IMG/VR virus record: IMGVR_UViG_3300045999_010033
Location: 1 to 64,000 of that record
Length of the DNA: 64,000 bases
Reading direction: 5' to 3' (one strand)
The translations under genes were made by a program, and so were the position numbers. The notes under the pieces are model-generated. The model ran no database searches, was not told the DNA's origin, and saw nothing but the letters and a program-made list of their open reading frames with translations. Numbering within the stretch: position 1 is the first letter of the stretch; the number at the start of each line of letters is the position of its first letter. This document shows positions 12,284 through 46,687 of this stretch, in pieces.

Positions 12284-12376
12284 TAGTCAGGACAGGATTC
12301 GAACCTGTACAAAGTTATTTACTATTACCTTTGCCAGCTCGGATGCTGGTGTGTCTACCTATTTCACCACCTGACC
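12284..12376 (-). ncRNA. tRNA-like RNA (Leu-type body, 6-nt non-anticodon loop)
   Basis: GGTCAGG/CCTGACT-A; D arm GTG..GGTAGA-CAC; CCAGC-ATCCGA-GCTGG; long variable arm; ACAGG-TTCGAAT-CCTGT. Confidence 0.8.
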
Positions 12377-14433: not shown

Positions 14434-14584
14434 TTTGGGGATACTCCCCAAAGTTAAGGCTTATTTTTCATACTACAATGGGCTTTTTGATAAAAGTTTT
14501 CGAAATTTTTCGGGGTTTTGTTAGAAATTATCTAATGCCCCTTGATAATCAACGGCTTATGCTTCCCTGAATATCAATGACTTA
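14434..14584 (-). promoter_or_regulatory. P1: Bacteroidota-type promoter + hairpin + two IHF-consensus sites
   Basis: -7 TAACTTTG (14449-56), ATTG 19 nt upstream; hairpin TTTGGGGA-GTA-TCCCCAAA; WATCAANNNNTTR at 14547 and 14572. Confidence 0.85.
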
Positions 14585-14791
14585 CAAGGTTTTTTATAAC
14601 CAATTGATCCTCAATCTCTTATGTATGGTATCCATATAGTATAGATAAAGTATTCAATATCAACGCTTTGCGATTTTTGTTAGATATTTTCTAACTCAAC
14701 ACGATGTTTCATTGAATATTTTCTAACATTATATCCAAATCATTAAATATTTTCTAAACGGCCCATCCATTCACTTCGGCCGGTATGTATT

Positions 14792-14988: not shown

Positions 14989-15282
14989 TTATAGGAGTCT
15001 ATCCAATATCCCCTTAATACCTTCAGGTGTTATTTCGGATAGTTTCAATATAAATGTACGCGAAGGTATCACGTATCCATCTTTACTTGCCACTTCCATT
15101 TCGTACATAGAACCCCCATCCGCGGAGATTCTGCTCATCGCTATGTTCAACCAAACCCCGCTACTACCATGATATGCTGATATCCATTGGTATCGGTTAG
15201 GAGTTATTGTAAGTGTGGGTAGGGGAATGCCGATGGTATCATGTAGTATTAACTTATGTGGGTTATTTATAGTTAGTCTCAT
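14989..15282 (-). CDS. LTIxNxxK family paralog
   Basis: MRLTINNPHKL. Confidence 0.75.
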   Translation of the reverse strand: MRLTINNPHKLILHDTIGIPLPTLTITPNRYQWISAYHGSSGVWLNIAMSRISADGGSMYEMEVASKDGYVIPSRTFILKLSEITPEGIKGILDRLL

Positions 15283-15392
15283 ATAATTGGGGGAGTATCT
15301 TGTATGTGTATTATATTATATGGGAGAGTATTCTTTTCTTATTACTACTACTATTACTATATAGATTGGAGGGGTTATTAATAGAATTATTA

Positions 15393-15950
15393 TTAGTGTA
15401 TTCCGAATCGCTGCTGCCAATAAGGTCGTAACACATTCAGCCCTATCGTATGTTCTAATGTATGCGTTGAGAATGCCGTCATTATATGCGATTTGAATGG
15501 AAGGGGTAGGGCATAGTTAGATGTTGGGTCCAGTTTCGGAATGTATCCATCATCGCTCATCAGTAGATACAGTTCCGATATCAGGGGTAACGGAGTGTCC
15601 AAATGGTGTAGCGGCATATTCCATTCCTTATAAACAGAAGTATGTGGTTGAGCCGCACCGTTGTGTATTCGGTGATGGGAAATGGATAGTCCTGCATAAC
15701 GTGTTCCATCGGAGTAGTAGAATGGTTCTCTGTTCATGTAAAGTTTATACATTACAACAGTTCCAGCTGCGGTTGGTTCGGATTCGAATATTATTATGTA
15801 ATATTGAGCGGCATCGGATTCGTATATCTTTAGATTGACTACCGGTCCTAATATTACATTTATTATGTGTCCTAGTTTATCTATATTATGTATTGTCAAT
15901 CTATTACTCATAAGTTTTTTTATTAGTGTATTCCGAATTGATTTTACCAA
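15393..15950 (-). CDS. LTIxNxxK family paralog (likely start MSNRL)
   Basis: RLTIHNIDKL..YYIIIF..LMSDDGYIP. Confidence 0.75.
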   Translation of the reverse strand: MVKSIRNTLIKKLMSNRLTIHNIDKLGHIINVILGPVVNLKIYESDAAQYYIIIFESEPTAAGTVVMYKLYMNREPFYYSDGTRYAGLSISHHRIHNGAAQPHTSVYKEWNMPLHHLDTPLPLISELYLLMSDDGYIPKLDPTSNYALPLPFKSHIMTAFSTHTLEHTIGLNVLRPYWQQRFGIH

Positions 15951-16351
15951 TAAGATGATAACATTTGTTTACTTATTCTATTTGGTAGGTAATCATCGTG
16001 CTTAACCAGTCTTGCAATCACTTCTGCTAATGGATTGGGTTTGGTTAAAGTAGTTAAGTACATTTTAAATTCTCTTATTTTAGGTAAGGGATTCAATTGG
16101 CCATCCTCAACATTATGTGTAGTGAATCGCATTCTAATATAAGGTTTGCCACTTGGGGATACCAATATGGTCCTTTCTATGTTTAAACTATGTTGCTTTG
16201 CGTATTTACCTTCTGCCGTATATTCGTTAAATGCTATCCAATATCTATCTTGGTCACTTCCGAAAAAAGGTGGTGATATCATGTCACCCATTTTAAAATA
16301 AATGGCACTTACCAATTTATCCATATTATATATGGTCAGCTTTTTACTCAT
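15944..16351 (-). CDS. LTIxNxxK family paralog
   Basis: KLTIYNMDKL..YWIAF..HDDYLP. Confidence 0.75.
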   Translation of the reverse strand: MSKKLTIYNMDKLVSAIYFKMGDMISPPFFGSDQDRYWIAFNEYTAEGKYAKQHSLNIERTILVSPSGKPYIRMRFTTHNVEDGQLNPLPKIREFKMYLTTLTKPNPLAEVIARLVKHDDYLPNRISKQMLSSYW

Positions 16352-16353
16352 AC

Positions 16354-16785
16354 TTATTTAATTACATTTATTAATATGGGATGTTTACGCAAAAAGGATT
16401 TCTTATCGTATTCGATTGATGTTTTGCATTGTGGATAGTAATCATCGTCTATTATCATACTCCATATATCATCAATCAAATCGTATGGATATTTTAGTTT
16501 CAATAAAGCCATAGGCCATCGGTAGTTCAGAATGGGGTTTTGTTCTTTGAATATAGATAAAGTAATATACACACATGGTATCCCATCTATATCGGTCGGT
16601 TCTCTATCAATAGAAAATATATAAACCCGTCCATTTACCTTTTCCATAATAAATGCGTATTCCAACTCAGTCGTTTTTGAACGAATATCTAAAAGTTTGT
16701 CATCATCTTCGAAATAATAGTGCGACATTCCACCTAATATGTTAATCAAATACATTTTATTGTATATGGTTATTTTCTTACTCAT
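16354..16785 (-). CDS. LTIxNxxK family paralog
   Basis: KITIYNKMYL..MIIDDDYYP. Confidence 0.75.
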   Translation of the reverse strand: MSKKITIYNKMYLINILGGMSHYYFEDDDKLLDIRSKTTELEYAFIMEKVNGRVYIFSIDREPTDIDGIPCVYITLSIFKEQNPILNYRWPMALLKLKYPYDLIDDIWSMIIDDDYYPQCKTSIEYDKKSFLRKHPILINVIK

Positions 16786-16789
16786 ATCT

Positions 16790-17227
16790 TTATATTGAAA
16801 AACTATGACTGATATTATTCATTATTGGATTAGTATTGCCCAAATTTACTCTCATCTTCGGAATGTGGTCCTCACGACGCACCATAGTTAGTAAGTTAGC
16901 CGTAATGGGCCAATGGTCTTTTAATGATGGTAAGGCTATAGGGTATGTTCTCCTATTACGAAGTTTTGATAATACATCGGTTGTAGCTAGCTTGATATTG
17001 ATATACTTTATCGGGTGGGATGCCGATGCTGTATCTATTTGTATATTCCGAAATATAAAAAGTTCGTGTTTTTTGATTACAGTTCCCATATCATCTGCCT
17101 CTTCAAAGTATAACCAATAATACGTATCGCATTCGAGGGTACAGGTGTTATTAAACGTTAAAGGAAGTAGTGTCTTACCTTCGTCAAGTATTTTACTTAC
17201 ATTTAATATCGTCAACTTTTTACTCAT
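16790..17227 (-). CDS. LTIxNxxK family paralog
   Basis: KLTILNVSKI..YWLYF..REDHIP. Confidence 0.75.
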   Translation of the reverse strand: MSKKLTILNVSKILDEGKTLLPLTFNNTCTLECDTYYWLYFEEADDMGTVIKKHELFIFRNIQIDTASASHPIKYINIKLATTDVLSKLRNRRTYPIALPSLKDHWPITANLLTMVRREDHIPKMRVNLGNTNPIMNNISHSFSI

Positions 17228-17769
17228 ATATTTTGTGTCAATGAACTATTGGGGTGTATATTTACACTACTCGTAACATTCATACTACCACTTATATTAC
17301 CATAATACGCGGGATTAACTATTTTTTTTGAATACCGCGAGGATACACTCTGTCTTGGTGTAAACGGTCCATTTAGTATTGTTGATATACTAGCAGATGT
17401 ACTCCCACTAAACATGGGTATGAAATTCTCATCATCAATCATTCCCTTTATTACATGTCCCAACACATCGGGGGCATACAATGATTCGATTGGCATTAAC
17501 CAAGTGCGTGGATTTTTAACGGTAAACGCCCGGTCTCTATATTCTAATCGAATTAGACAATTATCAGTATGATCAAATGGGTCTACACGAATTATCCTAT
17601 CTATTATAAGCCACCACTGTCCTAATACTTTATCATCATACGCACTCCAAAACAATTTATACTCATCCGGATAAACAATCACATTACGATTACGTCCATC
17701 TTCGACTGGAATAGTAGGGAATACTTTTTCTAGATTATTTATATTTAGTAACTTATTCATTGGTTTCAA
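17224..17769 (-). CDS. LTIxNxxK family paralog
   Basis: LLNINNLEKV..YKLFW..MIDDENFIP. Confidence 0.75.
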   Translation of the reverse strand: MKPMNKLLNINNLEKVFPTIPVEDGRNRNVIVYPDEYKLFWSAYDDKVLGQWWLIIDRIIRVDPFDHTDNCLIRLEYRDRAFTVKNPRTWLMPIESLYAPDVLGHVIKGMIDDENFIPMFSGSTSASISTILNGPFTPRQSVSSRYSKKIVNPAYYGNISGSMNVTSSVNIHPNSSLTQNI

Positions 17770-17771
17770 AA

Positions 17772-18155
17772 TTAAACTCCACGTGGAATGTAGTCCTCTA
17801 CTCCTGCCATATTTAAAATTTCAGATACCAATCGGACGTAATTCTTTAATTTGGATATGGGTATATTAAATCGACGTGTATGAGCAATCGGATTTGTACT
17901 TCCATCTACGATTTCATTTGTATTGAAACCTATCGTAACACATCGTATCGAATCTGGACTTATATGCTGTATATACCTGCTTATGTTTACTCTACACTCT
18001 TTTATTTTAATCCCATCATTTGTTCGACATTCAAAGTATATCCAATAGAAATCTCTATCTTCTCCGCAATGGAAATTGTAAAAGTTGTCATGTGCATATG
18101 TTCGACAGGCGTGACATGCCTTCTCTATATTATTTATAGTCAATATATTGCTCAT
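17772..18155 (-). CDS. LTIxNxxK family paralog
   Basis: ILTINNIEKA..YWIYF..VEDYIP. Confidence 0.75.
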   Translation of the reverse strand: MSNILTINNIEKACHACRTYAHDNFYNFHCGEDRDFYWIYFECRTNDGIKIKECRVNISRYIQHISPDSIRCVTIGFNTNEIVDGSTNPIAHTRRFNIPISKLKNYVRLVSEILNMAGVEDYIPRGV

Positions 18156-18160
18156 ATCCT

Positions 18161-18595
18161 TTAAAGTCTTTTTAATGTTTTTAAGGCTACCTTACGAGAG
18201 AGATTGAGGTGGTCGTATTCCGTTTTCACTTTGGATTTGGGATTGATATCGTATGACGTATCCATTTTAATTAAATCCATTACTAATTCAAATGGGTCAT
18301 TCAATAGGTGCAATCCTAGTTTCCATTCTCTCACAAATTGAGGTTGCATCTGCGGTTTAGTAAGTAACCGTAACCATATACATGGGTGGCCGGTATCAAC
18401 ATCCATTTCTATGAATCTATATATGCGCAATACATAATCAATGGTCTCCCTATTGTTATTAGACATGAATATCATTCTGTATGAATCGTGTTCATCAATG
18501 ATTGGCCCAACCGTTATACCGCCTCTCATGCTGTTCATCAGTGCCAACAGTTTATGTGGATTGTTTATAGTTATTAACTTTTTCATTGGTGTCAA
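18161..18595 (-). CDS. LTIxNxxK family paralog
   Basis: LITINNPHKL..YRMIF. Confidence 0.75.
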   Translation of the reverse strand: MTPMKKLITINNPHKLLALMNSMRGGITVGPIIDEHDSYRMIFMSNNNRETIDYVLRIYRFIEMDVDTGHPCIWLRLLTKPQMQPQFVREWKLGLHLLNDPFELVMDLIKMDTSYDINPKSKVKTEYDHLNLSRKVALKTLKRL

Positions 18596-18597
18596 AA

Positions 18598-18954
18598 TTA
18601 AAATGGCAGATCAACATTCCATTCCAAATATTCTTTTATAGCGATAACAAATGCATATGGGTTTAATATGTTTTTTGTTTGGATATCAAGTGCTGCTAAC
18701 TTTTTGGCATCATTTGCATTGTATCCATTGAATCTTATTTTTGCGGGCATTGTTGGTTCGAAGGTATGGGGCTCGATACACCATGGTCCTAACTTTGTTG
18801 AAAAGCGATTCATTCGTATAATGTAATGCTCATTTTTATACTCCACTTTAAACACATAATCTTTATCTTCTTCTATTAAGAATTGCACTATTACATTATC
18901 CGTCCAATATTGTCCTATCTTTCCTACACCATCTATAATCACTCGCGTTTTCAT
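18598..18954 (-). CDS. divergent LTIxNxxK family paralog
   Basis: RVIIDGVGKI..YVFKV. Confidence 0.6.
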   Translation of the reverse strand: MKTRVIIDGVGKIGQYWTDNVIVQFLIEEDKDYVFKVEYKNEHYIIRMNRFSTKLGPWCIEPHTFEPTMPAKIRFNGYNANDAKKLAALDIQTKNILNPYAFVIAIKEYLEWNVDLPF

Positions 18955-18970
18955 AAACTTTTGAATATTA

Positions 18971-19291
18971 CTATTTACTACAATCTTCCATAAACTTTTC
19001 CAAGCAAGTGATAAAACCTTCCGGCCGGTGCATTAATATCATATAATTTAGAACTATGGTCTTTCCTGCTATAAATGTACCCAATTTTATTTTGTATGGG
19101 TGACGGTGCAGAAAGAGAGCTGGTGCTATTTCTACATCACGCATTAACGATACATTGTATAGTGTGCCTTTCCATTTCAGAAAGATGTCATAGGAACGTT
19201 CCATTTCTACTACCTCAATTACAGATAAGTTTTCTGTCCAAAGTTCGGAATATTTAAGTTTACGTATTCCATTTATTGTTAGCTTCCCCAT
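18971..19291 (-). CDS. LTIxNxxK family paralog
   Basis: KLTINGIRKL..YDIFL. Confidence 0.7.
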   Translation of the reverse strand: MGKLTINGIRKLKYSELWTENLSVIEVVEMERSYDIFLKWKGTLYNVSLMRDVEIAPALFLHRHPYKIKLGTFIAGKTIVLNYMILMHRPEGFITCLEKFMEDCSK

Positions 19292-19294
19292 ATC

Positions 19295-19588
19295 TTATAT
19301 ATTCGGCATCATTTCAGCAATTGTGTTTACAACCCCTGCTAATTTATCCGGTGATAATAATTCTGATTTAGAAATTTTATCCTGCCATAGACCACAAGAT
19401 ACATTATACGTTTCATCTATGTTTGGCGCTCTACTCAATTTCAATTCATACCACTTATTCCTATGCCCTTTTAGATAAAAAAGAATAATATAACAATCAT
19501 CCTTTATTTGAACTGCGGAAGTTACTACATTACTATGATTAATCCTGTCGGTAATACTCCCGATGTTTTCTATTGTAAGCATAATCAA
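19295..19588 (-). CDS. LTIxNxxK family paralog
   Basis: MLTIENIGSI..YIILF. Confidence 0.7.
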   Translation of the reverse strand: MIMLTIENIGSITDRINHSNVVTSAVQIKDDCYIILFYLKGHRNKWYELKLSRAPNIDETYNVSCGLWQDKISKSELLSPDKLAGVVNTIAEMMPNI

Positions 19589-20910
19589 TATTTGAATCCA
19601 ATTCGTGTAGGTTCTTCACTCTTATACTCTGCTTCGTTTATATTATAAATTTCGGTAAGGGTCATTGGTGTAGTAGTCGTATGACTGATACCCAAATGAT
19701 TTATCAAATTTTGTGCATCATCAGCAGGAAGTGCATCAAATTTGTGTTCAGCAATCAAACGACCTTTACGAAGTAGTGCCGTATCAATTTTTCGTTTATC
19801 CATATTGAATGTTGCTACAATCTGAATGTTAAGAATGTCAGAAAGAATACCATCGGTTAGGTTTAGGATATTAGATACACCCGTCGAACCATTTGTGTTC
19901 CTATCGGTAATAACACGTTCCGCATCTTCGATAAACAGAACGGAGTCCGAGTTCTGAATAAGAAACGGAGTCATTTCCGGCGATGTAATGAAGTCCGCAA
20001 GGTATGGTGGAATAAATAGGACACGCTTACCTTCTATCTTAGAAGCAAGATATTTAAGGTAGTGAGTCTTTCCAGTGCCAGGTACACCATGCAGTAGAAC
20101 CAGCCCTTTACCTTTTGTTTTGTTTAACTGTGTAATAATCTTTGTATGGATTGGAACGAAGTCCTTCCCATAGTTCAATTGAATATCCAATGTAGTTTGG
20201 GGTAGTTCAAATGGTGCAGTAGTATAACCACGTTGGGTTGACATAACCAAATGTACATTGTTAATTTTAACCTTTAGCTTTCTGAAGGCTGATTTCATAA
20301 TATCAACTGCCTTTTGATATTCGGCAACATCTCCATTAGAATGTACATAACAATATCCATTATCTCTATCAACTCGATTAGTGTTTTTGTATTCAATTGG
20401 ACTGAGTGATATTACAATATAACCCGATTTTGTTTTCTTTTCTAAAATATACTCAGTTGTCCAGTGCTTTTTATCAATAGCACAATCCTTTGAAAATATA
20501 ACATTGTAACCATTAGCTATTAATCCATCGTATGCTTTTGCACTATCGAAGCCGGTATCCATATCCGATTCGGCTTCAAAGAAGTGTGTTATAACATTGC
20601 CGGTTTCAGTATAAATGTAATTGCTTATTGGGAACGACCCGGCCTCTACTGGTTTATAAAATGTACTATTAGTAACGGGCAATGTTGTCATTGAATGTAG
20701 TTTTTCTTCCAACCTAAATAATTTGCTTGACTCTTCTCCACTTTCTATCATTGATTCCATTTTACTCAAATTTTTTATAAACTCACGCGTATCGGTTCTA
20801 TCGAGATGTGGCTCGGTATGTATTTTCTCAGCTAAATTCATCGTATCCATAATGATTGATTTACTCAAAGATACGAAAATTTCCGTAAAAAACAAAATCC
20901 CTTTATTCAA
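19585..20910 (-). CDS. AAA+ ATPase (BCS1-like)
   Basis: Walker A HGVPGTGKT, Walker B FIEDAE, LLNLTDG, ATFN..IDTALLRKGR. Confidence 0.88.
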   Translation of the reverse strand: MNKGILFFTEIFVSLSKSIIMDTMNLAEKIHTEPHLDRTDTREFIKNLSKMESMIESGEESSKLFRLEEKLHSMTTLPVTNSTFYKPVEAGSFPISNYIYTETGNVITHFFEAESDMDTGFDSAKAYDGLIANGYNVIFSKDCAIDKKHWTTEYILEKKTKSGYIVISLSPIEYKNTNRVDRDNGYCYVHSNGDVAEYQKAVDIMKSAFRKLKVKINNVHLVMSTQRGYTTAPFELPQTTLDIQLNYGKDFVPIHTKIITQLNKTKGKGLVLLHGVPGTGKTHYLKYLASKIEGKRVLFIPPYLADFITSPEMTPFLIQNSDSVLFIEDAERVITDRNTNGSTGVSNILNLTDGILSDILNIQIVATFNMDKRKIDTALLRKGRLIAEHKFDALPADDAQNLINHLGISHTTTTPMTLTEIYNINEAEYKSEEPTRIGFKY

Positions 20911-21004: not shown

Positions 21005-21343
21005 TCATATCATGTATGGTTTAGCGTGTTTATTAACTATCATTTGCTCATTAACGTTTAACCCATCTTTGTATATAGTTGCTATCGGACGTTTATATTT
21101 ATCTAAATTTCTTGAGGATATTTTCACTTTATCGCCGGGTTTCAATATAGTTTCAAGATAAGCCTTAGCCTTTTGGGCCGATTCTTTTAAAATAGGGTCT
21201 TCCGACTTAAGTTCATCAGAATTTATACCATAGAAACGTATATTCGTTTCCCATGTCATATAAAATCCCAAATCAATTTTAGCTTTAATCGTATCGCCAT
21301 CTATTACTTTAATGATTTCTGCGTTGTAATTGTATAATTCCAT
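21005..21343 (-). CDS. thermonuclease (SNase-like)
   Basis: KVIDGDTI, IRFYGI, DKYKRPIA. Confidence 0.85.
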   Translation of the reverse strand: MELYNYNAEIIKVIDGDTIKAKIDLGFYMTWETNIRFYGINSDELKSEDPILKESAQKAKAYLETILKPGDKVKISSRNLDKYKRPIATIYKDGLNVNEQMIVNKHAKPYMI

Positions 21344-23218: not shown

Positions 23219-24169
23219 TTACTTATTCAAGTTCAAAATAAACCCACCACCATTATCCGATGTTACAACGCTTGGTACATTACTACCGCCTGCCCTCCAA
23301 GCTTCAATCCATTGTTGTTGGATAAGCATCGGTGTAAGAGTTTGCTGCTTCAATCGGTTTGATTCCGCTTCGGCCTTTGCTCGGGTCAGCATAGATTGTG
23401 CTTCACCTTCTGCTTGCGCCACTTTAATTTTGGCTTCAGCCTCAGCGGTTTTCACATCGTTCTCTGCTTTGAGAGCGGCTTGTACTGCATTGTTTTTAGC
23501 ATTGATTGCGTTTTTGAAAGTTTCAGGATAAATAAGGTTAGATGTAAACTGATTAACAATAAATCCTTCATTCAATAATTGTGTTTCCAAAATACGTCTT
23601 ACTTCAACTTCATAGTTTTGACGGTTTCCAATAAGCTCATCCGCCGTATATTTGTTAGTAGCCAGTCGGAACGCATCAAATACTGCGGTTTTCAAAAAGC
23701 CTTCTTCGATTTGATCCAAGCTTCTACGATACTTTGAAAAGATTTGAGGAACTTTCTCACGTTTTACCGAATAGTTAATAATAGGTGATACGTGGAACTC
23801 CGAACCATCCTTTGAGTTTACGATAAATGAATTATCACCGGTATATTCTTTGTGTTGAATAAATGTAGGGAACTCATAGATATTATGCGTAATCGGATTA
23901 TAGAATACCATACCGGTTACTTCGGTGACATCACTTACGCCTTTGTTATCACCATACAAATTCACTTTAACACCAACATGCCCTGCATCAATTCGTTCAC
24001 ACGATGCAAAAAGCAAAATAGAAATCAAAATACCAAGTACTGCTGCGAAAATAACCTTTACCATTTTTTTAATTTTTAATTGTTGTTTTAATTTTTCTTG
24101 TTTTATTTCTTCTTCTTGCTCTTTTTGTCGGCGAGCATACCTTTGTTCGAAACTTTCATAATTAGCCAT
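23219..24169 (-). CDS. SPFH/band-7/prohibitin family membrane protein
   Basis: TM, IDAGHVGVKV..G, SKDG, AINAK..A coiled coil with EAEA repeats. Confidence 0.9.
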   Translation of the reverse strand: MANYESFEQRYARRQKEQEEEIKQEKLKQQLKIKKMVKVIFAAVLGILISILLFASCERIDAGHVGVKVNLYGDNKGVSDVTEVTGMVFYNPITHNIYEFPTFIQHKEYTGDNSFIVNSKDGSEFHVSPIINYSVKREKVPQIFSKYRRSLDQIEEGFLKTAVFDAFRLATNKYTADELIGNRQNYEVEVRRILETQLLNEGFIVNQFTSNLIYPETFKNAINAKNNAVQAALKAENDVKTAEAEAKIKVAQAEGEAQSMLTRAKAEAESNRLKQQTLTPMLIQQQWIEAWRAGGSNVPSVVTSDNGGGFILNLNK

Positions 24170-25705: not shown

Positions 25706-26035
25706 TTATAAAAGTTTATTCCATACCAATCTTTCTGCTATGAATTTAAGGAAAGCGATAAATGTATCCGATGTCTTTATACTATCGAGATCAATAGATG
25801 CATCCTGAACAACATACGTTCCAACATTTCCGCTGCCTCTCTCACATTTTTTTACATTAAAAGAATTTACCTTCCAGTTAAACTCAAACCATAAAGCGTG
25901 TCCGTTAAATATATCATGCACATCTTCATATACCCATACATTATTATTCCATGTCTCTGCTTCAATACGGCATTCTACATTATCAATTCGGAATCTAGCA
26001 TCATGTATCTTGTTAAAGTTGTTAATAGTCACCAT
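25706..26035 (-). CDS. possible dispersed LTIxNxxK family member
   Basis: MVTINNFNKI. Confidence 0.55.
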   Translation of the reverse strand: MVTINNFNKIHDARFRIDNVECRIEAETWNNNVWVYEDVHDIFNGHALWFEFNWKVNSFNVKKCERGSGNVGTYVVQDASIDLDSIKTSDTFIAFLKFIAERLVWNKLL

Positions 26036-27104: not shown

Positions 27105-28598
27105 TCACTTCAATTTAGAACGAATCTCATCGAAGGTAATCCGATTGTGGAATGTACCATCTTTGTAGATAGTATTCAACGCACCATGTCGTTCTTCTTC
27201 CCAAGATACTTTATCCTTCAGTTCATAGTTTTTATGATGAAGTTTACCCAATGAATCGGATTCCATTACTTCAACTACCTGCAACAAACCAGTAGCAGAT
27301 TTCTTTGTACCATCATCGGTGATAGGGTCTTTGAAGATTTCTCTACCTTCTTCGTTCACTTCAACATAAGTAGCCTTCATAGCGAAACCGAATGTATCGC
27401 GTGTGTTGTACTGATATGTGAATGAACCCACACCGAACACAATGTTAGTCGAAGCGAATCCCTTACTAGCGAGCCTTTGGCAAATTTCCTCAGCCCTCTC
27501 AAGCGTAATAGAGTCACCATAGATTGCTCCAATGTGAGGGTCTAATACTTTGTAACCCTGCTCATTGATTGTACCGCCAAACACATCCCAAAGCAATTCA
27601 ATCACACCTTTATATGAAGGATGTGTTGCTTGTTCCGCCGAGTACATATCAGGCTTTGTGTTTAAACCACACACAATATCGGTAGGATTACCACTATCAG
27701 GTCTGATTACCAATTTACCATCACGTGCCATAATCTTATCTTTCAGTACAACAACGTGCTCCGTACATACTTTCCACAAGTCCCAAGTATCGGATACAAC
27801 CGAAAGGATACCGGTGGGATATGTGTCCAACAATCTACTGAACGTTCCGATTTCATCATCTTTACTACCTGCACACATTACACTATGTTCGGTTGCATTT
27901 ACACTACCAACAACCATACCTTTTGCTCCATAGAATTTGCGAGCACCGTGAATTACTGGAAGACTATCCGACCCCAAGAACGATGTGGCATGTCCAAGAC
28001 CAGAACTGATTGTTACATCAATACTATCAAGACCACGCATTGAGAAGTCATGTGCCTGCCAATCAACAAACCACGCACGTTCCTTGTCCGTTTTATCCTG
28101 CCACTTCGTCAATACTTTACGATATTGATGTGCTATGGTAGCGGATGTCATAGGCTTCCAAAGCAAGTTAGAAATAATAGTTTCCAAATAGTTCGTAATC
28201 CAATAGAAATCGGGGTGAGTATTACGAATGGTCAGAACCGGCACCTTAATAGGAACGGTAGTACCTTCGGTGATTGCTTTCACTTCAATCGGAAGATAAC
28301 CCAAATCGTGCAACCTTTCAAAGTGCGAAACATCATAGTCAGTACCAAGGTAAAGACTCAGTTCCTCTTTGATTTCAGCGATAACTACATCCTTTGGCTG
28401 ACTGAAAAATTCCTTTTCAAAAGCCTCGTGGATTTCCATCATAACCATTTGCTGTCCAAACGATACGACTTCATCACATCCTTTAGGAGCGTGTTTGTTA
28501 CTACGCGGTGTGAAGTTTGAATATACCATAGTCGTACCTTTGGGATATTGTTGATGGTGTCCTGTCTTGTAACCGTCAGTAAGAAGAAGCGGATTCAT
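27105..28598 (-). CDS. nadV: nicotinamide phosphoribosyltransferase family (Nampt; Namat-like)
   Basis: LLTDGYKTGH, HDFSMRG, ATEHSVM, VSDTWD, VIRPDSG, IYGDSI. Confidence 0.93.
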   Translation of the reverse strand: MNPLLLTDGYKTGHHQQYPKGTTMVYSNFTPRSNKHAPKGCDEVVSFGQQMVMMEIHEAFEKEFFSQPKDVVIAEIKEELSLYLGTDYDVSHFERLHDLGYLPIEVKAITEGTTVPIKVPVLTIRNTHPDFYWITNYLETIISNLLWKPMTSATIAHQYRKVLTKWQDKTDKERAWFVDWQAHDFSMRGLDSIDVTISSGLGHATSFLGSDSLPVIHGARKFYGAKGMVVGSVNATEHSVMCAGSKDDEIGTFSRLLDTYPTGILSVVSDTWDLWKVCTEHVVVLKDKIMARDGKLVIRPDSGNPTDIVCGLNTKPDMYSAEQATHPSYKGVIELLWDVFGGTINEQGYKVLDPHIGAIYGDSITLERAEEICQRLASKGFASTNIVFGVGSFTYQYNTRDTFGFAMKATYVEVNEEGREIFKDPITDDGTKKSATGLLQVVEVMESDSLGKLHHKNYELKDKVSWEEERHGALNTIYKDGTFHNRITFDEIRSKLK

Positions 28599-28621
28599 AA
28601 TATATGTGTTTATTGTTTGAA

Positions 28622-29524
28622 TTAAATTAAGAAATTGGTAAATACATTGAACTGGTGTGTTATGATTTCATCAGCTTCAATATCTTTGTAAGAGTTTGTT
28701 GTTATAATTTTATTAAAATGTGGAGTAAGTACGTCCAAACCGGCGGAGAAGATACCGTGAGTAACTACCAAATAGATTTGAGCCGTAGGTAATTGTTCAC
28801 GTATTGCTTTAGCCAATTCAATAAAGGTACGTCCTCCATCACAAATATCATCAATGATAACATACTTTAATGGTACATCTGTCTTACTAATCGGTAGATT
28901 CGGTACTTCCGTTTTTATGATTTGCCCCGTCTTTATATCACGGATTTTATTCGCCGTAGCAATTGATTGAACTCCCAATGCTTTAGCTACATCAAATGTT
29001 TTTTTGTATGCGCCGGAATCGGGGCTTATCAAACATAATTCGTCTGGATTAAAGGTTGAGCCTGATATTTTGGATACAGCGAAGTTGATAAATTGATAGT
29101 ATGTATTGGTTGCTTTTTTAAGTCCATTCACACACGCTTCAATTACATCCGAATGTGGATCTAATACCTTAACCCTATCAAAGTCCAAAGAGTTGATAAC
29201 TGGAGAAATAACATCTTTTACATAATTGATTCCACCCTCAACAAATTTTCTATCGGAACGAGCTCCTATAAAGTAAGGAACTGATAAATCAATCTTCATT
29301 GTTTTGTTCAATCCTCTAATTGCTTTCACTCCACAAATAATCAATTCCAAATCGGAAAAGTTATTTAGACGAGATACTATCGTTACATTAGATGTACCAT
29401 GTCGGATTTTATCATGTTCGGAATTGGGAATTTCTAAACTTTGCTGCCCATCGGGGAATTTTGATACCTTATATAAAAGGTTTTCTATTCTATTTGCTGT
29501 GGGATTTGTAAGGTCTAATTTCAT
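28622..29524 (-). CDS. prs: ribose-phosphate pyrophosphokinase family (Prs; Adps-like)
   Basis: FPDGQ, PYFIGARSDR, LDPHS, SPDSGA, IIDDICDGGRTF, VTHGIFS. Confidence 0.92.
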   Translation of the reverse strand: MKLDLTNPTANRIENLLYKVSKFPDGQQSLEIPNSEHDKIRHGTSNVTIVSRLNNFSDLELIICGVKAIRGLNKTMKIDLSVPYFIGARSDRKFVEGGINYVKDVISPVINSLDFDRVKVLDPHSDVIEACVNGLKKATNTYYQFINFAVSKISGSTFNPDELCLISPDSGAYKKTFDVAKALGVQSIATANKIRDIKTGQIIKTEVPNLPISKTDVPLKYVIIDDICDGGRTFIELAKAIREQLPTAQIYLVVTHGIFSAGLDVLTPHFNKIITTNSYKDIEADEIITHQFNVFTNFLI

Positions 29525-29918: not shown

Positions 29919-31145
29919 TTATTTTTCGTGTTTCAATAAAAAAGTATTTGATATTACTTTGAATGAGATAGTTCTATCTAAACTACGAATCACTACACCC
30001 TCCCTATCAAAGTTTGGATTAAGTACCGATTTAGCATCAGCGTAACTCAACAATTCACTCACATCATTCGGTAAGATAAAGTTTGTATCTAAAACCGGCA
30101 CAGTCTCCAACCCAAAGGTATGTTCCATCGTAGCCATAAACATCGGAAGGCCATAATAGGTTTGGTTATCAATATCAAAGATGTTAAAGAACCTTACGGT
30201 CTGACCTTTTATCTTATATGGATTACCCTGAATACCCTCACCGATTAACTCACCCTGAATGGAAAGGTTCTTACCATAACTCCTAAGTTTGTTTTCCAAG
30301 TCAAGCTCTCTAGCCACCTTCCAAAATGTGTTTTCCGTTTTAGGTCGTTCAATGCCATCATCACACATAACCATACCGGGTACGAATGGTTCAGGTTCAC
30401 TCAATTCCAAATTACGGCTACACACTCCAAACACACCATCTTTGTAATAGAACGTTGCTGAACTACCATCAAGCTTTTCCGTTACATAGAACTGATGCTT
30501 TGATTGTAATCTCCAGCCTTCATATTCTTTTGTTAAGTTTTGTACACGCTCTTCATCGGTCTTTCTAATGAATGATGGGAACAACCCTTTCACTTTGCCG
30601 GATAGTTCGGCCGGTATTGGTGGCTCATATTTAGTGATACCCAACCTTTCAGTTACATCTTCACCGTCTACTATGGTGATAAGTCCTTTATATAATGTAC
30701 TATCTAACATAGTAAGTGGTAACAACAAACCTTGTGAAACCTGTCCACGCAATCGAATCGTTTTCAATCTGAATCCCTCACTACCATCTTTCATTTTCTT
30801 ATATGAAGATTTACGAAGAAACTCAAACTCATCACAAATCGGTAAGAACGAATCAACTTCACAATAAACACAAAGGTCACCCGGCTTATACTCGCCCTTT
30901 TTAGTTACTACCTTCCATCCGCCAACAACGGCAACTTCGATAGCATCCGCACCATCAATCGGTTGGATATCGGTAATCGTTCTTATACTTGCTAACTTCC
31001 TATCGGTCATAATTACGGAATTTTGTTCGTTTACAAATCTATCATTTTCGGTGAATCCGGCTGAATCGTATTCCGGCACATCATCTTCACTCATTGCTTG
31101 TAAGGCCATATCTTGCCATTCTTTCATTTCATCTTTCATATCCAT
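29919..31145 (-). CDS. RNA ligase, DRB0094/Rnl5 family
   Basis: KLASI..IQPIDGADAIE, YCEVDSFLP, LRGQVSQGL, TEKLDGSS, QGELIG, REGVV, FKVISN. Confidence 0.9.
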   Translation of the reverse strand: MDMKDEMKEWQDMALQAMSEDDVPEYDSAGFTENDRFVNEQNSVIMTDRKLASIRTITDIQPIDGADAIEVAVVGGWKVVTKKGEYKPGDLCVYCEVDSFLPICDEFEFLRKSSYKKMKDGSEGFRLKTIRLRGQVSQGLLLPLTMLDSTLYKGLITIVDGEDVTERLGITKYEPPIPAELSGKVKGLFPSFIRKTDEERVQNLTKEYEGWRLQSKHQFYVTEKLDGSSATFYYKDGVFGVCSRNLELSEPEPFVPGMVMCDDGIERPKTENTFWKVARELDLENKLRSYGKNLSIQGELIGEGIQGNPYKIKGQTVRFFNIFDIDNQTYYGLPMFMATMEHTFGLETVPVLDTNFILPNDVSELLSYADAKSVLNPNFDREGVVIRSLDRTISFKVISNTFLLKHEK

Positions 31146-39327: not shown

Positions 39328-39633
39328 TTAATATGATTTTTTACCAAATATATTATCGAGTCGCGTTTTAAATAACTTATACGCGTTATCAATATTGAAC
39401 CACTCCGCGGATACATAGCTGCTATCTTCATACTTATACATGAATTTTCCCAAATCATCATCCCAGTGGTGTGGAGTTCGTTCTAAATGTAATTTCAGTA
39501 CGGAATCACAAGTTTGCATGGAAATGAAATCAAACGTATAGACATCGGGTGTAGTTGTAATCCGACACATACACGCACCAAAGTCTTTTGTAGTAAAGGC
39601 TTCGATATTTTTGATTGTAAGTCTATGTTTCAT
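39328..39633 (-). CDS. dispersed LTIxNxxK family member
   Basis: RLTIKNIEAF..YTFDF..LHLER. Confidence 0.65.
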   Translation of the reverse strand: MKHRLTIKNIEAFTTKDFGACMCRITTTPDVYTFDFISMQTCDSVLKLHLERTPHHWDDDLGKFMYKYEDSSYVSAEWFNIDNAYKLFKTRLDNIFGKKSY

Positions 39634-40765: not shown

Positions 40766-41064
40766 TGTTTTTCTATTTCAATTTTTACTTTTTGCCAAGC
40801 TAATAAAGATCCTGCAATAAGACCTTTAGCATGGGGGTGAAAATCTCCTGCTATTTCAAGTGATTCCTTCAAATCGTTTAATATCTCATCCACCGCTATT
40901 AATGCACACTCCTTAGCGTATTTGTTCTTTGGTACAGAATATAATTCCATAAGTTCAAGACTACCATTGAACTCCTCTCCCATTGACATTTTTTCAACCA
41001 GCTCTTTCGCTTTTTCTTTTGGTGTCATAATTTGTTTATTTTTACTCGTATGAATTTCTATCAA
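40762..41064 (-). CDS. MTPKE..WQKVKIEI family protein
   Basis: MTPKEKAKEL..CALIAVDEI..WQKVK. Confidence 0.7.
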   Translation of the reverse strand: MIEIHTSKNKQIMTPKEKAKELVEKMSMGEEFNGSLELMELYSVPKNKYAKECALIAVDEILNDLKESLEIAGDFHPHAKGLIAGSLLAWQKVKIEIEKQ

Positions 41065-42154
41065 TGTTTACAACAAACGGAAAACGAGGTATGCCGTCCG
41101 GCGTTAAATTGAAATACTTTACAGTTGCCTGCTTACCTATGAGCTGTTTTCGGTTCTTCAACATTTCGGCAGTTTCTTCCCACGTTCCCTTTACATTTGA
41201 TTTGAAGCGTTTACCATCTTCCGTTTGGAATACAAAGTACCCAGCAGTTCCTGCTCTATTACCTTCACCCTCACAAATATCAATGATTTGGTATTCTTCA
41301 TCAATAAATGATTTGTGCTTCAATAGGTTCTTACTACGTTTGTTTTCATACTTACCATCCAAACGTAGCATCTGTCCTTCATATCCGGCTTCCACATATT
41401 GACCATACATAGCCATCAGCACTTCTTCGGTTAAGCATACGGTAGTTTCAACTCTAACACAATGCTTTTCAAAGGCATTTTTGAAATCATCAAACAAATC
41501 AACCAAAGTAATAGAACGATTCACAAACACGTCATTTACACTTGGTACATCGTAAATCCAATACTGAATGTTCTTCTCACTTTCTTCTAAATCTTCTTCG
41601 GTTGGTTTGGTTTTCTTCACTAACGAAACAATCTTATTGAAATCGTTGGCGAACTTATCGGCATACAACTCACCATCCAATATCAAATCGGGTTTGTTCT
41701 GAAATAGTTTATCCAATGATTGGCGGATATGTGGTGCGGATATAATCTCTTTACCATTACGGCTGAACATTCCATCCTTTGTAACTATACAGCGAATACC
41801 GTCCAGCTTCGGTTGAGAGTAGATAGGGTATTCGACCTTATCTTTGTAGTCCTCCCATTTTGCGGCCAACATCGGTTCAAAGTATTGCTTCTTATTTATA
41901 TGTTTGATGTTCTCAAAGTAACCACGTTCCAATTTCAATTTACGTTTAGCTTCAGCTTCTTTGAGTGCCTGCTCGTTATCCGTAGTGGCGTTTGCTCGCC
42001 CTTCATTCTTACCATACACTTCTGTCCACTCACTAATTACTTTTTTACCATCGGTTTGGCCTGATATGGTACGATACCGATTCTTTACTACTTCAATAGT
42101 CCACTCCTGCACCTTACCGCCCTTCGTGGATTTGTAAATTGTTTCTAACTTCAT
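41042..42154 (-). CDS. lig: ATP-dependent DNA ligase
   Basis: EPMLA, QPKLDGIRC (motif I), LDGELY, EGQMLR, LLKHK, C-terminal OB fold (PRFP). Confidence 0.92.
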   Translation of the reverse strand: MKLETIYKSTKGGKVQEWTIEVVKNRYRTISGQTDGKKVISEWTEVYGKNEGRANATTDNEQALKEAEAKRKLKLERGYFENIKHINKKQYFEPMLAAKWEDYKDKVEYPIYSQPKLDGIRCIVTKDGMFSRNGKEIISAPHIRQSLDKLFQNKPDLILDGELYADKFANDFNKIVSLVKKTKPTEEDLEESEKNIQYWIYDVPSVNDVFVNRSITLVDLFDDFKNAFEKHCVRVETTVCLTEEVLMAMYGQYVEAGYEGQMLRLDGKYENKRSKNLLKHKSFIDEEYQIIDICEGEGNRAGTAGYFVFQTEDGKRFKSNVKGTWEETAEMLKNRKQLIGKQATVKYFNLTPDGIPRFPFVVNIDRNSYE

Positions 42155-42828: not shown

Positions 42829-42910
42829 TACCCCGAATCGGACTCGAACCGATACGCCTTTCGGCACCGCATCCTAAGTGCGGCGTGACTGCCAATTCCA
42901 CCACCAGGGC
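42829..42910 (-). tRNA. tRNA-Leu(TAG)
   Basis: CCGCA-CTTAGGA-TGCGG, long variable arm, A73. Confidence 0.92.
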
Positions 42911-42917
42911 AATTAAG

Positions 42918-43002
42918 CGGAGAGTGATGGTAACGATCCATCTTGAGTTTTACCCCAGCCTCGGTTTAGCAAACCGGCCCCTTACCTTTCGGGCAACTCT
43001 CC
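42918..43002 (-). tRNA. tRNA-Ser(GCT), atypical T-loop ATCGTTA
   Basis: CCGGT-TTGCTAA-ACCGA; GGAGAGT/ACTCTCC-G. Confidence 0.85.
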
Positions 43003-43006
43003 ATTG

Positions 43007-43087
43007 TACCTCGAATCGGACTCGAACCGATACGTCTTTCGACACTTGATTTTGAGTCAAGCATGTCTACCATTCCATCACCAAGGC
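43007..43087 (-). tRNA. tRNA-Leu(CAA)
   Basis: CTTGA-CTCAAAA-TCAAG. Confidence 0.92.
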
Positions 43088-43357: not shown

Positions 43358-43364
43358 ATCTATG

Positions 43365-43447: not shown

Positions 43448-43455
43448 ATTATAAG

Positions 43456-43741: not shown

Positions 43742-43742
43742 G

Positions 43743-46009: not shown

Positions 46010-46348
46010 TTATTGTATAGATAAAAGATAAGTTTTTAATTTTTTCAAAACAACTTCGATGTTAAATGCTATTCGATATGGTCGTTTTAAACGGTGTTCA
46101 TCTATATTAATGTAAGTCACACGATGCCATCCCATAGCAAATAGCTGATATGTTCCATCGGAAAGGGGAGTTTTATATAAGATAACTTCCACAATCGGTC
46201 CGAAGGAGTTATTCTGTGCGTATGGTATATTTCTAAACCTAAATGCATAGCTAGGTCTACCTGCTACAAGCACTTCACCTACACTTTCTATTACGTGCCC
46301 ATCGCACTCCATTCCAACTGCCCTATCAATATTTTTTATGATTAACAT
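46010..46348 (-). CDS. dispersed LTIxNxxK-like protein
   Basis: MLIIKNIDRA..YAFRF; close paralog of the next gene. Confidence 0.7.
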   Translation of the reverse strand: MLIIKNIDRAVGMECDGHVIESVGEVLVAGRPSYAFRFRNIPYAQNNSFGPIVEVILYKTPLSDGTYQLFAMGWHRVTYINIDEHRLKRPYRIAFNIEVVLKKLKTYLLSIQ

Positions 46349-46357: not shown

Positions 46358-46687
46358 TTATTTGTGTGATTCAATCCAATGTTGTAACTTCTTCAATACA
46401 GTTTTAATTCTACCAGCCAAACAATGGGCATGACGTATGTCGGATTCATCAACGTAAATAAACGTTACTTTCTGCCATCCCATAGCAAATAGTTGATACT
46501 TTCCATCAGAATTAGGAACTCTCTCCAATACAACTTCAACGATTGGACCACGAAGGCTACTCTGAACCCAAGGTATATCAAATTTAAATGTGTATCTAGT
46601 TTTGGATGCGTTTTGTCCAGCATCCATTACATCAATCCCATTACAAAACATTCCGATAATCCTATCAATATTTTTTATAACTAGCAT
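46358..46687 (-). CDS. dispersed LTIxNxxK-like protein
   Basis: MLVIKNIDRI..YTFKF; shared GPIVEV..YQLFAMGW. Confidence 0.7.
   Translation of the reverse strand: MLVIKNIDRIIGMFCNGIDVMDAGQNASKTRYTFKFDIPWVQSSLRGPIVEVVLERVPNSDGKYQLFAMGWQKVTFIYVDESDIRHAHCLAGRIKTVLKKLQHWIESHK

What the first reader, a model, noticed from the sequence alone, without database searches (positions are those of the whole stretch)
14989..19588. Eleven-gene tandem array (plus four dispersed copies) of divergent LTIxNxxK proteins
Seen: 11 consecutive ORFs start with (K/R)L(T/N)I.N..K(L/I) or a variant, followed by a Y-x-(I/L)-x-F strand. Many end L..P..L...I..M..DDY.P. Related starts occur at 25706, 39328, 46010 and 46358. 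Internal identity is very low, so this looks like an old, strongly diversified expansion covering 4.6 kb. Inference: one fold used as a modular binder library against different host targets.
Basis: partly seen in the sequence, partly recalled or inferred. Interest (0 to 1): 0.62.

Follow-up and report, generated by a model that had tools for sequence, protein, structure and literature searches.

The report
Diverged small-protein gene array in lake phage
Eleven neighbouring genes, plus four scattered ones, in an uncultured 221-kb T4-like lake phage encode very diverged copies of one small, previously undescribed protein fold; the array is old and still gains and loses genes, and what the proteins do is unknown, with binding of host proteins the best guess.

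Summary
On the minus strand, 14989-19582, eleven back-to-back ORFs share the N-terminal motif and the same order of motifs after it. The array falls into two size classes.

- **Long class (a02-a08, 127-178 aa):** an unambiguous family, with full-length BLASTP at 21-31% identity.
- **Short class (a01, a09-a11 and the dispersed d1-d4, 95-118 aa):** tied to the long class and to each other by profile-profile comparison. Probabilities are 90-96% for the main links and about 50% for a01, d1 and d2, against about 5% for the best unrelated ORF in the genome.

Two AlphaFold models built from separate alignments (a03 and d4, pLDDT 88-89) give the same helix, five-strand sheet, helix layout. They also share about 20 of their 50 best PDB neighbours. 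All neighbours are weak (Z 8.2 or less), so the fold is generic and names no known family.

Pfam, PHROGs, NCBIfam, PADLOC and GenBank phages give nothing. Relatives occur only in lake metagenome phages, where they form tandem arrays of 5-17 copies.

In the tree, each window paralogue pairs with an orthologue from another phage, so the duplications are old. Whole genes are gained and lost between close relatives, and dN/dS is higher than in the flanking genes.

The function (a set of binders for host takeover or counter-defence) is still inference.

The parts
14989..15282 (-). a01, short-class member (97 aa); the weakest link in the array
   Evidence: The N-terminal motif RLTINNPHKL is 8/10 identical to that of a08, and 22 nt of its 5' end are 91% identical to a08's. 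hhalign to the long-class profile gives 50.7% over 80 columns, against about 5% noise. All family motifs are present in order by eye. It is absent from relative L001. The Atlas model has low confidence.
15393..15911 (-). a02, long-class member (172 aa)
   Evidence: BLASTP to a03 gives E 9e-12 over the full length. The orthologue in L001 is 88% identical. It is deleted exactly in a lake-metagenome contig.
15944..16351 (-). a03, long-class member (135 aa); modelled
   Evidence: The AlphaFold2 model has pLDDT 88.8 and pTM 0.81, with helix 10-24, five strands and helices 99-117. BLASTP to a07 gives E 1e-15.
16354..16785 (-). a04, long-class member (143 aa)
   Evidence: The L001 orthologue is 85% identical, dN/dS 0.83.
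16790..17227 (-). a05, long-class member (145 aa)
   Evidence: The L001 orthologue is 92% identical. Its tail ends SHSFSI, like the distant orthologue P0020.
17224..17760 (-). a06, long-class member (178 aa) with a conserved C-terminal tail
   Evidence: It forms a supported clade with P0018-P0020, P0022 and P0023. The tail NGPF..P..G...RYS is kept in distant orthologues.
17772..18155 (-). a07, long-class member (127 aa)
   Evidence: Absent from L001.
18161..18586 (-). a08, long-class member (141 aa)
   Evidence: Orthologues P0002, P0003, P0006 and P0008 come from metagenomes. Absent from L001.
18598..18954 (-). a09, short-class member (118 aa)
   Evidence: BLASTP to a10 gives E 1e-4. The a09/a10 group against the long-class profile gives hhalign 95.8% over 99 columns. 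Its L023 orthologue carries the canonical motif KRLTINGIEKI.
18971..19291 (-). a10, short-class member (106 aa)
19295..19582 (-). a11, short-class member (95 aa)
   Evidence: The long-class HMM gives E 4e-4 to 2e-5. hhalign of the a11 group gives 89.9% to the long class and 93.9% to d3/d4.
19585..20910 (-). AAA+ ATPase directly upstream, same strand, 2 nt from a11
   Evidence: Matches PF00004-type AAA and jumbo-phage ATPases. The order SNase, AAA, array is kept in L001 and L023.
21005..21343 (-). Staphylococcal-nuclease-like gene upstream of the ATPase
   Evidence: phrog_452 at E 2e-24. PF00565 in the relatives.
25706..26035 (-). d1, dispersed short-class member (109 aa); weak link
   Evidence: hhalign to the a11 group gives 47.7% over 86 columns, against about 5% noise. 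It aligns with the short class.
39328..39633 (-). d2, dispersed short-class member (101 aa); weak link
   Evidence: hhalign to the long class gives 56%. The long-class HMM gives E 0.0015.
46010..46348 (-). d3, dispersed short-class member (112 aa)
   Evidence: 47% identical to d4. The d3/d4 pair against the a11 group gives 93.9%.
46358..46687 (-). d4, dispersed short-class member (109 aa); modelled
   Evidence: The AlphaFold2 model from short-class sequences only has pLDDT 88.3 and pTM 0.80, with the same order of elements as a03. Its best Atlas neighbour is an unnamed viral cluster, TM 0.68/0.72.
15387..15433 (.). Direct repeat, copy 1 (3' end of a02)
   Evidence: A 47-nt repeat, 81% identical with 19 nt exact, spaced 530 bp from copy 2. 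The 530-bp deletion in run X7 joins the two copies.
15917..15963 (.). Direct repeat, copy 2 (3' end of a03 plus the spacer)

Best explanation
The array is a lineage-specific multigene family of small soluble proteins. It has no signal peptide, no membrane segment and no catalytic motif.

All members share one compact fold: an N-terminal extended segment (the LTIxN motif) leading into a helix, then a five-stranded antiparallel sheet, then a short and a long C-terminal helix.

The family sits in the accessory part of an uncultured freshwater T4-like jumbo phage. There it is probably co-transcribed with an AAA+ ATPase and a nuclease.

Shown: the family arose by ancient tandem duplications and still gains and lose whole genes. 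At least one such event went through recombination between short repeats at gene ends.

Inferred, not shown: each paralogue is a non-enzymatic binding module with its own surface, aimed at a different host or competing-phage protein during takeover or counter-defence. The conserved N-terminal segment and hydrophobic core hold the scaffold together.

My confidence is about 0.9 for 'one family, one fold, old and dynamic' and about 0.4 for the binder or counter-defence role. The figure given is for the whole statement.
For: Family:
- The long class is linked by full-length BLASTP at E down to 1e-16.
- hhalign gives long class to a09/a10 group 95.8%, long class to a11 group 89.9%, and a11 group to d3/d4 93.9%.
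a09 and a10 are linked only as a group profile: as single sequences they score 2.7% and 8.6%.

Fold:
- The two models (a03 and d4) came from disjoint alignments and have pLDDT 88.8 and 88.3.
- Both show the same order of secondary-structure elements.
- About 20 of the 50 best PDB entries are shared between them.

No known family: Pfam, PHROGs, PADLOC, NCBIfam, PDB sequences and GenBank phages all give nothing.

Distribution:
- The long-class profile finds only 18 proteins among 1.84 billion.
- The short-class profile finds 174, all unnamed metagenome proteins.
- Related lake phages hold tandem arrays of 5-17 copies, and some hold none.

Age: none of the 7 long-class paralogues pairs with another, and each pairs with an orthologue elsewhere.

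Turnover:
- L001 lacks a01, a03, a07 and a08.
- a02 is deleted exactly between 47-nt repeats in a lake contig.

Selection: dN/dS is 0.36-0.83 for the six array genes compared (a02, a04, a05, a06, a09, a10), against 0.12-0.27 for the flanking genes.

Physical properties: soluble, pI 5.5-9.5, no hydrophobic span.

Context: the neighbours include NAD salvage genes, two RNA ligases, a DNA ligase and tRNAs.
Against: - There is no direct evidence for any binding partner, for expression or for timing. No RNA run holds the locus.
- The structural neighbours are within the range expected for a common arrangement (best Z 8.2), so they say nothing about function.
- dN/dS comes from one pairwise comparison per gene and stays below 1.
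- a01, d1 and d2 are joined to the family at only about 50% hhalign probability.
- The strongest conservation lies in the first 13 residues. That would also fit a shared signal or docking peptide rather than pure scaffold.
- Related phages that lack the family (G006, G008; 74-84% complete) show it is dispensable.
Confidence: 0.5

Rival explanations
1. Packaged, ejected internal proteins of the T4 IP type. The conserved N-terminus would be a capsid-targeting sequence that loads diverse small proteins into the prohead. They would then be injected with the DNA to block host nucleases.
For: - The phage has T4-type head genes: the major capsid protein hits phrog_138 and T4-like phages, and there is a gp21-type prohead protease at 102 bits.
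[quoted passage not shown] IPI* is a small fold with sheets flanked by N- and C-terminal helices (PMC3012670).
- The sizes here (95-178 aa) and the pattern of a conserved N-terminus with a diverged remainder resemble that.
Against: - Here the rest of the protein is homologous too, unlike the T4 IPs.
- The N-terminal segment is modelled with pLDDT about 85, which would fit a segment that packs on the domain. No contacts were examined.
- An (L/I)xE protease site occurs in the first 40 residues of only 4 of 15 members, at unaligned positions and below the chance rate.
- IPI* is not among the structural neighbours.
- The array lies about 150 kb from the head genes.
Confidence: 0.15
2. Adaptor set for the upstream AAA+ ATPase. 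The shared N-terminal peptide would dock on the ATPase, and the variable surfaces would bring different host proteins to it for unfolding or removal.
For: - a11 starts 2 nt after the ATPase stop, on the same strand.
- The order SNase, AAA, array is kept in L001 and L023.
- Every phage found with the family also has this ATPase, although the loci were found through the ATPase.
Against: - In L002, L003 and G001 the arrays lie several kb to tens of kb from the ATPase.
- G006 and G008 have the ATPase but no family member.
- Four copies in the window are dispersed.
- No interaction was tested.
Confidence: 0.1
3. Assembly or secretion-chaperone-like helpers for the phage's own proteins, or minor virion parts, rather than host-directed factors.
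For: About 13 of the 50 best neighbours of the d4 model are type III secretion class I chaperones, at Z 5.1-6.6. YbjN-like DR_1245 appears for both models.
Against: - The Z values are in the noise band.
- The fold lacks the helix between strands 3 and 4 that, from my own knowledge, those chaperones have.
- High turnover and dispensability do not suit core assembly factors.
- The homodimer test gave no answer.
Confidence: 0.08
4. An array of immunity-type proteins that neutralise toxins of competing phages or bacteria, or that give superinfection exclusion.
For: Immunity proteins TriTu (7zhm_D) and a CdiI (6cp9_B), and anti-CRISPR proteins, appear among the neighbours at Z 4.7-6.0. From my own knowledge, tandem arrays of diverged immunity genes are known in bacteria.
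Against: No toxin genes lie adjacent. The matches are weak, and there are no sequence-family hits.
Confidence: 0.07
5. No real family: only a start-of-gene sequence bias is shared.
For: Lys-rich second to fourth codons are common genome-wide. In 3 of the 11 genes the motif's codons spell TATAAATA.
Against: - Full-length homology is detected.
- Codons at the motif vary synonymously.
- The two models share a topology.
Confidence: 0.02

Closest known systems
T-even phage internal proteins (IPI, IPII, IPIII and the variable IP locus)
   Same: Small proteins (about 95-190 aa) of a T4-type phage. The locus varies between relatives, the N-terminus is conserved and the rest diverges. The known role is inhibition of host defence nucleases (PMC3012670).
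   Different: Here the whole domain is homologous, not only the leader. There is no (L/I)xE processing site. The N-terminus is modelled with pLDDT about 85, which would fit a segment packed on the fold rather than a free leader. No sequence or structural match to IPI* was found.
Plastic or hyperplastic regions of T4-superfamily genomes, with shuffled small accessory ORFs (own knowledge)
   Same: Accessory small genes in a T4-like genome, with gene gain and loss between close relatives and recombination at short repeats.
   Different: This is a single paralogous family in a tight operon-like array with 0-16 nt spacers. It is not a set of unrelated ORFs each flanked by a promoter and stem-loop cassette.
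Capping protein CapZ alpha/beta C-terminal half; UBC/RWD-like domains; type III secretion class I chaperones and YbjN-like proteins
   Same: The general layout: a helix, an antiparallel five-strand sheet, and a C-terminal helix packed on one face. The best Z is 8.2 (7a0h_B, rmsd 3.4, 109 aligned) for a03 and 8.0 (4akr_D) for d4.
   Different: Sequence identity is 1-17%. The Z values are within the range the tool gives for models with no true relative. There is no actin, ubiquitin or secretion context. This is a resemblance of arrangement, not membership.
Gene accordion expansions of host-range factors in large DNA viruses, and anti-defence gene clusters of phages (own knowledge)
   Same: Tandem copy-number change in a family of small accessory proteins, faster protein evolution than in the flanks, and neighbouring genes that counter host defences.
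   Different: The duplications here are old, about one substitution per site between paralogues, not recent amplifications. No target is known.

Membership tests
T4-type internal proteins with a capsid-targeting sequence | An N-terminal leader of about 10 residues ending in an (L/I)-x-E site cut by the gp21-type prohead protease | tested here: not met
   Only 4 of 15 members have (L/I)xE in the first 40 residues, at unaligned positions. The chance expectation is 0.47 per protein. The protease itself is present.
T4-type internal proteins with a capsid-targeting sequence | Members share only the leader; the mature parts are unrelated | tested here: not met
   The mature parts are homologous over their full length.
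T4-type internal proteins with a capsid-targeting sequence | Presence in the mature virion and ejection with the DNA | not testable with these tools
   There is no cultured phage and no proteome. The family is absent from the nearest cultured phages.
Any curated protein family (Pfam, PHROGs, NCBIfam, PADLOC) | A profile match at or near the curated threshold | tested here: not met
   The best hits have E 0.003-0.1, are far below the cut-offs, and differ from one paralogue to the next.
Type III secretion class I chaperone / YbjN-like fold | An alpha-beta3-alpha-beta2-alpha topology that forms homodimers | tested here: inconclusive
   Z is 4.6-6.6 to many such chaperones. The models show five consecutive strands with no helix between them. 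The homodimer prediction gave no answer.
CapZ (actin capping protein) fold | A structural match clearly above background and covering the subunit | tested here: not met
   Z is 8.0-8.2 to the C-terminal half only. Foldseek gives E 0.01 and TM 0.26-0.41. This is within the tool's stated noise band.
   Twelve members are joined at hhalign 90% or more, or by significant BLASTP. a01, d1 and d2 reach about 50% over 55-86 columns, against a null maximum of about 5%. The evidence for those three is suggestive, not conclusive.
   a03 (long class) and d4 (short class, dispersed) were modelled from disjoint alignments. They show the same element order and share about 20 of their 50 best PDB neighbours.

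The most novel reading that the evidence does not exclude
The family is a programmable adaptor or inhibitor set. A conserved N-terminal handle (MxKKLTIxNxxKL) docks every paralogue onto one phage machine, plausibly the co-transcribed AAA+ ATPase. The diversified sheet and helix surfaces each capture a different host defence protein. Unequal recombination at the conserved gene ends then lets lake phage populations swap and resize this repertoire as hosts change.
Probability: 0.1. Interest if true: 0.75.

Novelty: new member of a known kind. Interest (0 to 1): 0.42.

Why it matters
Large phages carry many fast-evolving small genes of unknown role, and multigene families among them are good candidates for host-takeover and counter-defence factors. 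This family is undescribed: no curated model matches it, only 18 relatives of the long class exist among 1.84 billion representatives, and the roughly 174 short-class relatives are all unnamed.

It takes up 15 genes in this genome and up to 17 or more in related lake phages. It also shows gene gain and loss in natural populations.

If the paralogues do bind distinct host proteins, the family would offer a compact natural scaffold with many specificities. It would also give a way to find defence systems of freshwater bacteria. If not, it is one more orphan phage family.

Tried and rejected
- **DNA similarity to GenBank phages.** Megablast found nothing. tblastn with d4 and a09 found nothing at E up to 1.
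- **The 21 IMG/VR loci found through the ATPase.** None has the long class downstream of the ATPase. The short class was found upstream only after a short-class profile had been built.
- **Cultured relatives by capsid similarity.** Flavobacterium phage immuto has no member. Microcystis phage Mel-JY01 gives only a spurious hit inside its capsid gene, with stop codons.
- **Structure searches.** Foldseek against PDB and BFVD gave nothing at E up to 0.001. The ESM Atlas gave only unnamed viral clusters. The Atlas model of a01 was too poor to use.
- **Homodimer prediction for a03.** The verdict was 'no answer', which is not evidence either way.
- **Promoter and terminator scan of the array.** Fewer promoter-like sites than in shuffled sequence; uninformative.
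- **A DNA-level explanation of the motif.** The late-promoter-like TATAAATA appears inside the Thr-Ile-Asn-Asn codons of only 3 of the 11 genes. Rejected.
- **A capsid-targeting leader with a protease site.** Not met.
- **Expression.** No RNA run holds the locus.
- **First null-control scripts.** They failed or timed out and were rerun successfully.

No alternative genetic code was used.

Full report
**What the window is**

The window is the first 64 kb of a single 221,095-bp contig.
- It is a tailed phage, with a major head protein, portal and large terminase and a T4 gp21-type prohead protease.
- Its capsid protein is closest to those of Microcystis phage Mel-JY01 (54%) and Flavobacterium phage immuto (53%), and more distantly to T4-like phages.
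- ORFs of 120 aa or more lie overwhelmingly on the minus strand, roughly nine tenths by summed length.
- Genes lack Shine-Dalgarno sequences upstream.
- The array DNA occurs in lake and freshwater metagenomes from 18 studies.
- The window also carries about 25 tRNAs, a tmRNA and a GOLLD RNA. It further holds NAMPT plus a PRPP-synthetase-like gene, two RNA ligases, a DNA ligase and two other AAA ATPases.
- The array therefore lies in the accessory part of the genome, about 150 kb from the head genes.

**The observation**

Eleven ORFs lie back to back on the minus strand from 14989 to 19582. Spacers between a02 and a11 are 0-32 nt, with 110 nt between a01 and a02. The last one, a11, starts 2 nt after the stop of a 441-aa AAA+ ATPase, which is itself preceded by a staphylococcal-nuclease-like gene.

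All eleven begin with a form of M-x-K-K-L-T-I-x-N-x-x-K-L. The strict pattern occurs 19 times in all 108,495 ORF residues of the genome.

Codons at the motif vary synonymously: four codons for Thr and three for Leu. The constraint is therefore on the protein.

**Is it one family?**

All-against-all BLASTP shows that a02-a08 align over their full length at 21-31% identity, with E down to 1e-16. It also links a09 to a10 (E 1e-4) and a11 to d4 (E 0.004), and d3 to d4 at 47% identity.

Using relatives from metagenomes, I built profiles for each subgroup. hhalign gave:

| Comparison | Probability | Columns |
|---|---|---|
| long class vs a09/a10 group | 95.8% | 99 |
| long class vs a11 group | 89.9% | 86 |
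| a11 group vs d3/d4 | 93.9% | 89 |
| long class vs d2 | 56% | 55 |
| long class vs a01 | 50.7% | 80 |
| a11 group vs d1 | 47.7% | 86 |

As a null, I compared the long-class and a11-group profiles with all 227 genome ORFs of 85-190 aa. The best unrelated ORF reached about 5%. a09 and a10 reach the family only as a group profile.

By eye, a01 also carries the later motifs in order: Y-x-W-I, then phi-x-phi-x-phi-x-R, then R-x-F-x-L...L..P..I...I.

The family splits into a long class (a02-a08, 127-178 aa) and a short class (a01, a09-a11, d1-d4, 95-118 aa). The short class has shorter loops and a shorter first helix.

**Fold**

- a03, modelled with 26 long-class sequences, gave pLDDT 88.8 and pTM 0.81. 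Its elements are helix 10-24, strands 29-32, 36-44, 50-59, 70-82 and 91-98, then helices 99-103 and 105-117.
- d4, modelled with 23 short-class sequences only, gave pLDDT 88.3 and pTM 0.80. Its elements are helix 7-10, strands 18-25, 31-39, 46-55, 64-70 and 73-79, then helices 81-84 and 87-107.

The order of elements is the same. The exhaustive structural searches of the two models share about 20 of their 50 listed PDB entries. Shared entries include CapZ subunits, Med17, a BRISC subunit, DR_1245, SycH, Spa15, Atg10, FANCL, TriTu and AcrIF24.

The best scores are Z 8.2 (7a0h_B, rmsd 3.4, 109 aligned) for a03 and Z 8.0 (4akr_D) for d4. The tool states that such values are typical for models with no true relative. 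Foldseek finds nothing at E up to 0.001 in PDB or BFVD. The Atlas returns only unnamed viral clusters, the best at TM 0.68/0.72.

The fold is thus a common helix, five-strand meander, helix arrangement. Many small protein-protein interaction modules have it, but no membership can be claimed.

The N-terminal motif is modelled with pLDDT about 85 as an extended segment leading into the first helix, which begins at residue 10 just after the motif's Asn at position 9. That would fit a structural role and suggests it is not a free leader (inference; no contacts were examined).

**Distribution**

No curated family matches, no PDB sequence matches and no GenBank phage matches.
- The long-class profile found 10 proteins in the word-indexed search of 5.8 billion. 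It found 18 in the exhaustive search of 1.84 billion representatives.
- The short-class profile found 174, all unnamed metagenome proteins, some on contigs of 152-293 kb.

Context of the relatives:
- L001, a freshwater metagenome contig, keeps the order SNase, AAA, a11', a10', a09', a06', a05', a04', a02'. It lacks a08, a07, a03 and a01.
- L023 keeps SNase and AAA, followed by an a11-like gene, a 4HBT thioesterase, two a10-like genes, an a09-like gene, an a06-like gene and one more.
- L024 holds six long-class genes in tandem.
- More distant lake phages, whose ATPase is 50-57% identical, have no array downstream of the ATPase. Several do hold tandem arrays of the short class elsewhere in the genome.

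Copy numbers of the short class in those records:

| Record | Copies | Note |
|---|---|---|
| G001 | about 17 | 274 kb, complete, two arrays |
| G009, G010 | 11 each | |
| G004 | 10 | |
| G002, G003 | 9 each | |
| G005 | 5 | |
| G006, G007, G008, G011 | 0 | 14-84% complete |

The nearest cultured phages have none.

**Age and dynamics**

In a maximum-likelihood tree of 26 long-class proteins, none of the seven window paralogues pairs with another. Each of a02, a03, a04, a05, a06 and a08 pairs with an orthologue from another phage with high support. Branches between paralogue lineages are about one substitution per site. The duplications therefore predate the split of these phages.

Turnover continues.
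- Gene content differs between the window and L001.
- A contig from an independent lake study (run X7) carries an exact 530-bp deletion, 15389 to 15920, that removes a02.
- The deletion end points lie in a 47-nt direct repeat, 81% identical with 19 nt exact, formed by the homologous 3' ends of a02 and a03.
- The 5' ends of several genes are also alike at the DNA level. For example, a06 and a08 are 82% identical over 57 nt including the spacer, and a01 and a08 are 91% identical over 22 nt. These stretches could serve as recombination substrates (inference).

Against the L001 orthologues, dN/dS is 0.36-0.83 for the six array genes compared (a02, a04, a05, a06, a09, a10) and 0.12-0.27 for the ATPase, the nuclease and the downstream gene. 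This rests on one comparison per gene, so it is indicative only.

**Mechanism**

Shown:
- one family and one predicted fold;
- soluble proteins with no hydrophobic span and pI from 5.5 to 9.5;
- no enzyme signature;
- an operon-like arrangement behind an AAA+ ATPase;
- old paralogue lineages, with ongoing gene gain and loss.

Inferred: the proteins act as non-enzymatic binders with different surfaces, most likely in host takeover or counter-defence. This rests on the neighbouring genes (NAD salvage, RNA repair and tRNAs, which I know from my own knowledge to counter host defences), on the turnover and on the faster protein evolution. I put about 0.4 on this.

Rivals:
- **T4 internal-protein-like packaged inhibitors.** This is attractive because the phage has T4-type head genes and the protease, and because T-even internal proteins share only a capsid-targeting leader (PMC3012670). 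However, the defining leader-plus-cleavage-site feature is not met, and the mature parts are homologous.
- **Adaptors for the adjacent AAA+ ATPase.** The synteny is kept in three relatives but not in the more distant ones.
- **Chaperone-like helpers.**
- **Immunity-type proteins.**

**Limits**

- The homodimer test gave no answer.
- There are no RNA data, the host is unknown and no relative is cultured.
- The membership of a01, d1 and d2 rests on hhalign probabilities of about 50% plus motif order.

**Verdict**

This is a new, undescribed protein family of a known general kind: accessory multigene families of large phages.

Noticed in passing
window 55991-56405 (-): A full-length GOLLD RNA (RF02032, 296.6 bits, E 8e-84) sits inside the tRNA cluster.
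   Followed up: no
window 42829-57994 (-) and 12284-12376 (-): About 25 tRNA genes and a tmRNA (tag GNTYANAEYAVAA) lie here. A separate, unusually long 93-nt tRNA-like gene has an anticodon that ARAGORN could not read.
   Followed up: no
window 27105-29524 (-): NAMPT-type nicotinamide phosphoribosyltransferase lies next to a PRPP-synthetase-like gene. From my own knowledge, this NAD-salvage pair is known in phages to counter NAD-depleting defences.
   Followed up: no
window 29919-31145, 41042-42154, 44527-45594 (-): Two RNA ligases (an Rnl2/PHA02142 type and a T4 Rnl1 type) and an ATP-dependent DNA ligase. d3 and d4 lie close upstream of the Rnl1-type gene, separated by one 134-aa ORF.
   Followed up: no
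window 14516-14757: Four or five copies of an 18-21-nt repeat (TTAGAAAATATCTAACAAAA-like on the coding strand) lie in the 570-nt gap downstream of a01. They are kept in relative L001 and may be a regulatory or terminator element.
   Followed up: partly
window 15387-15433 and 15917-15963: A 47-nt direct repeat flanks a02. A lake-metagenome contig (run X7) has the exact 530-bp deletion between the copies. Loose ends at 15018, 16066 and 17742 in runs X2 and X4 suggest further variant junctions.
   Followed up: partly
window 17224-17430 (C-terminal tail of a06); a05 tail 16790-16830: The a06 lineage keeps a C-terminal extension (NGPF.P..G...RYS....N..YG.ISGS...SHS(F/I).I) in orthologues that are otherwise about 20-25% identical. 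a05 ends SHSFSI, like the distant P0020. This may be a short linear motif.
   Followed up: no
L002:11562-15406 and L003:11561-16075: Related lake phages carry, just downstream of the ATPase, a different tandem set of 110-350-aa ORFs that all begin MI(K/R)L(K/T)(D/E)IL.E. This may be a second N-terminally marked multigene family.
   Followed up: no
whole genome G000, 1-221095: ORFs of 120 aa or more lie overwhelmingly on the minus strand, roughly nine tenths by summed length; the few plus-strand ones are not known to be genes. No terminal repeat was found.
   Followed up: no
window 60551-61408 (-) and 23219-24169 (-): A response-regulator receiver-domain protein and an SPFH/Band 7 protein are encoded by the phage.
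   Followed up: no
L023:2661-3023: A 4HBT thioesterase gene is inserted inside the array of a relative. The same gene lies near the ATPase in L004, L013 and L018.
   Followed up: no
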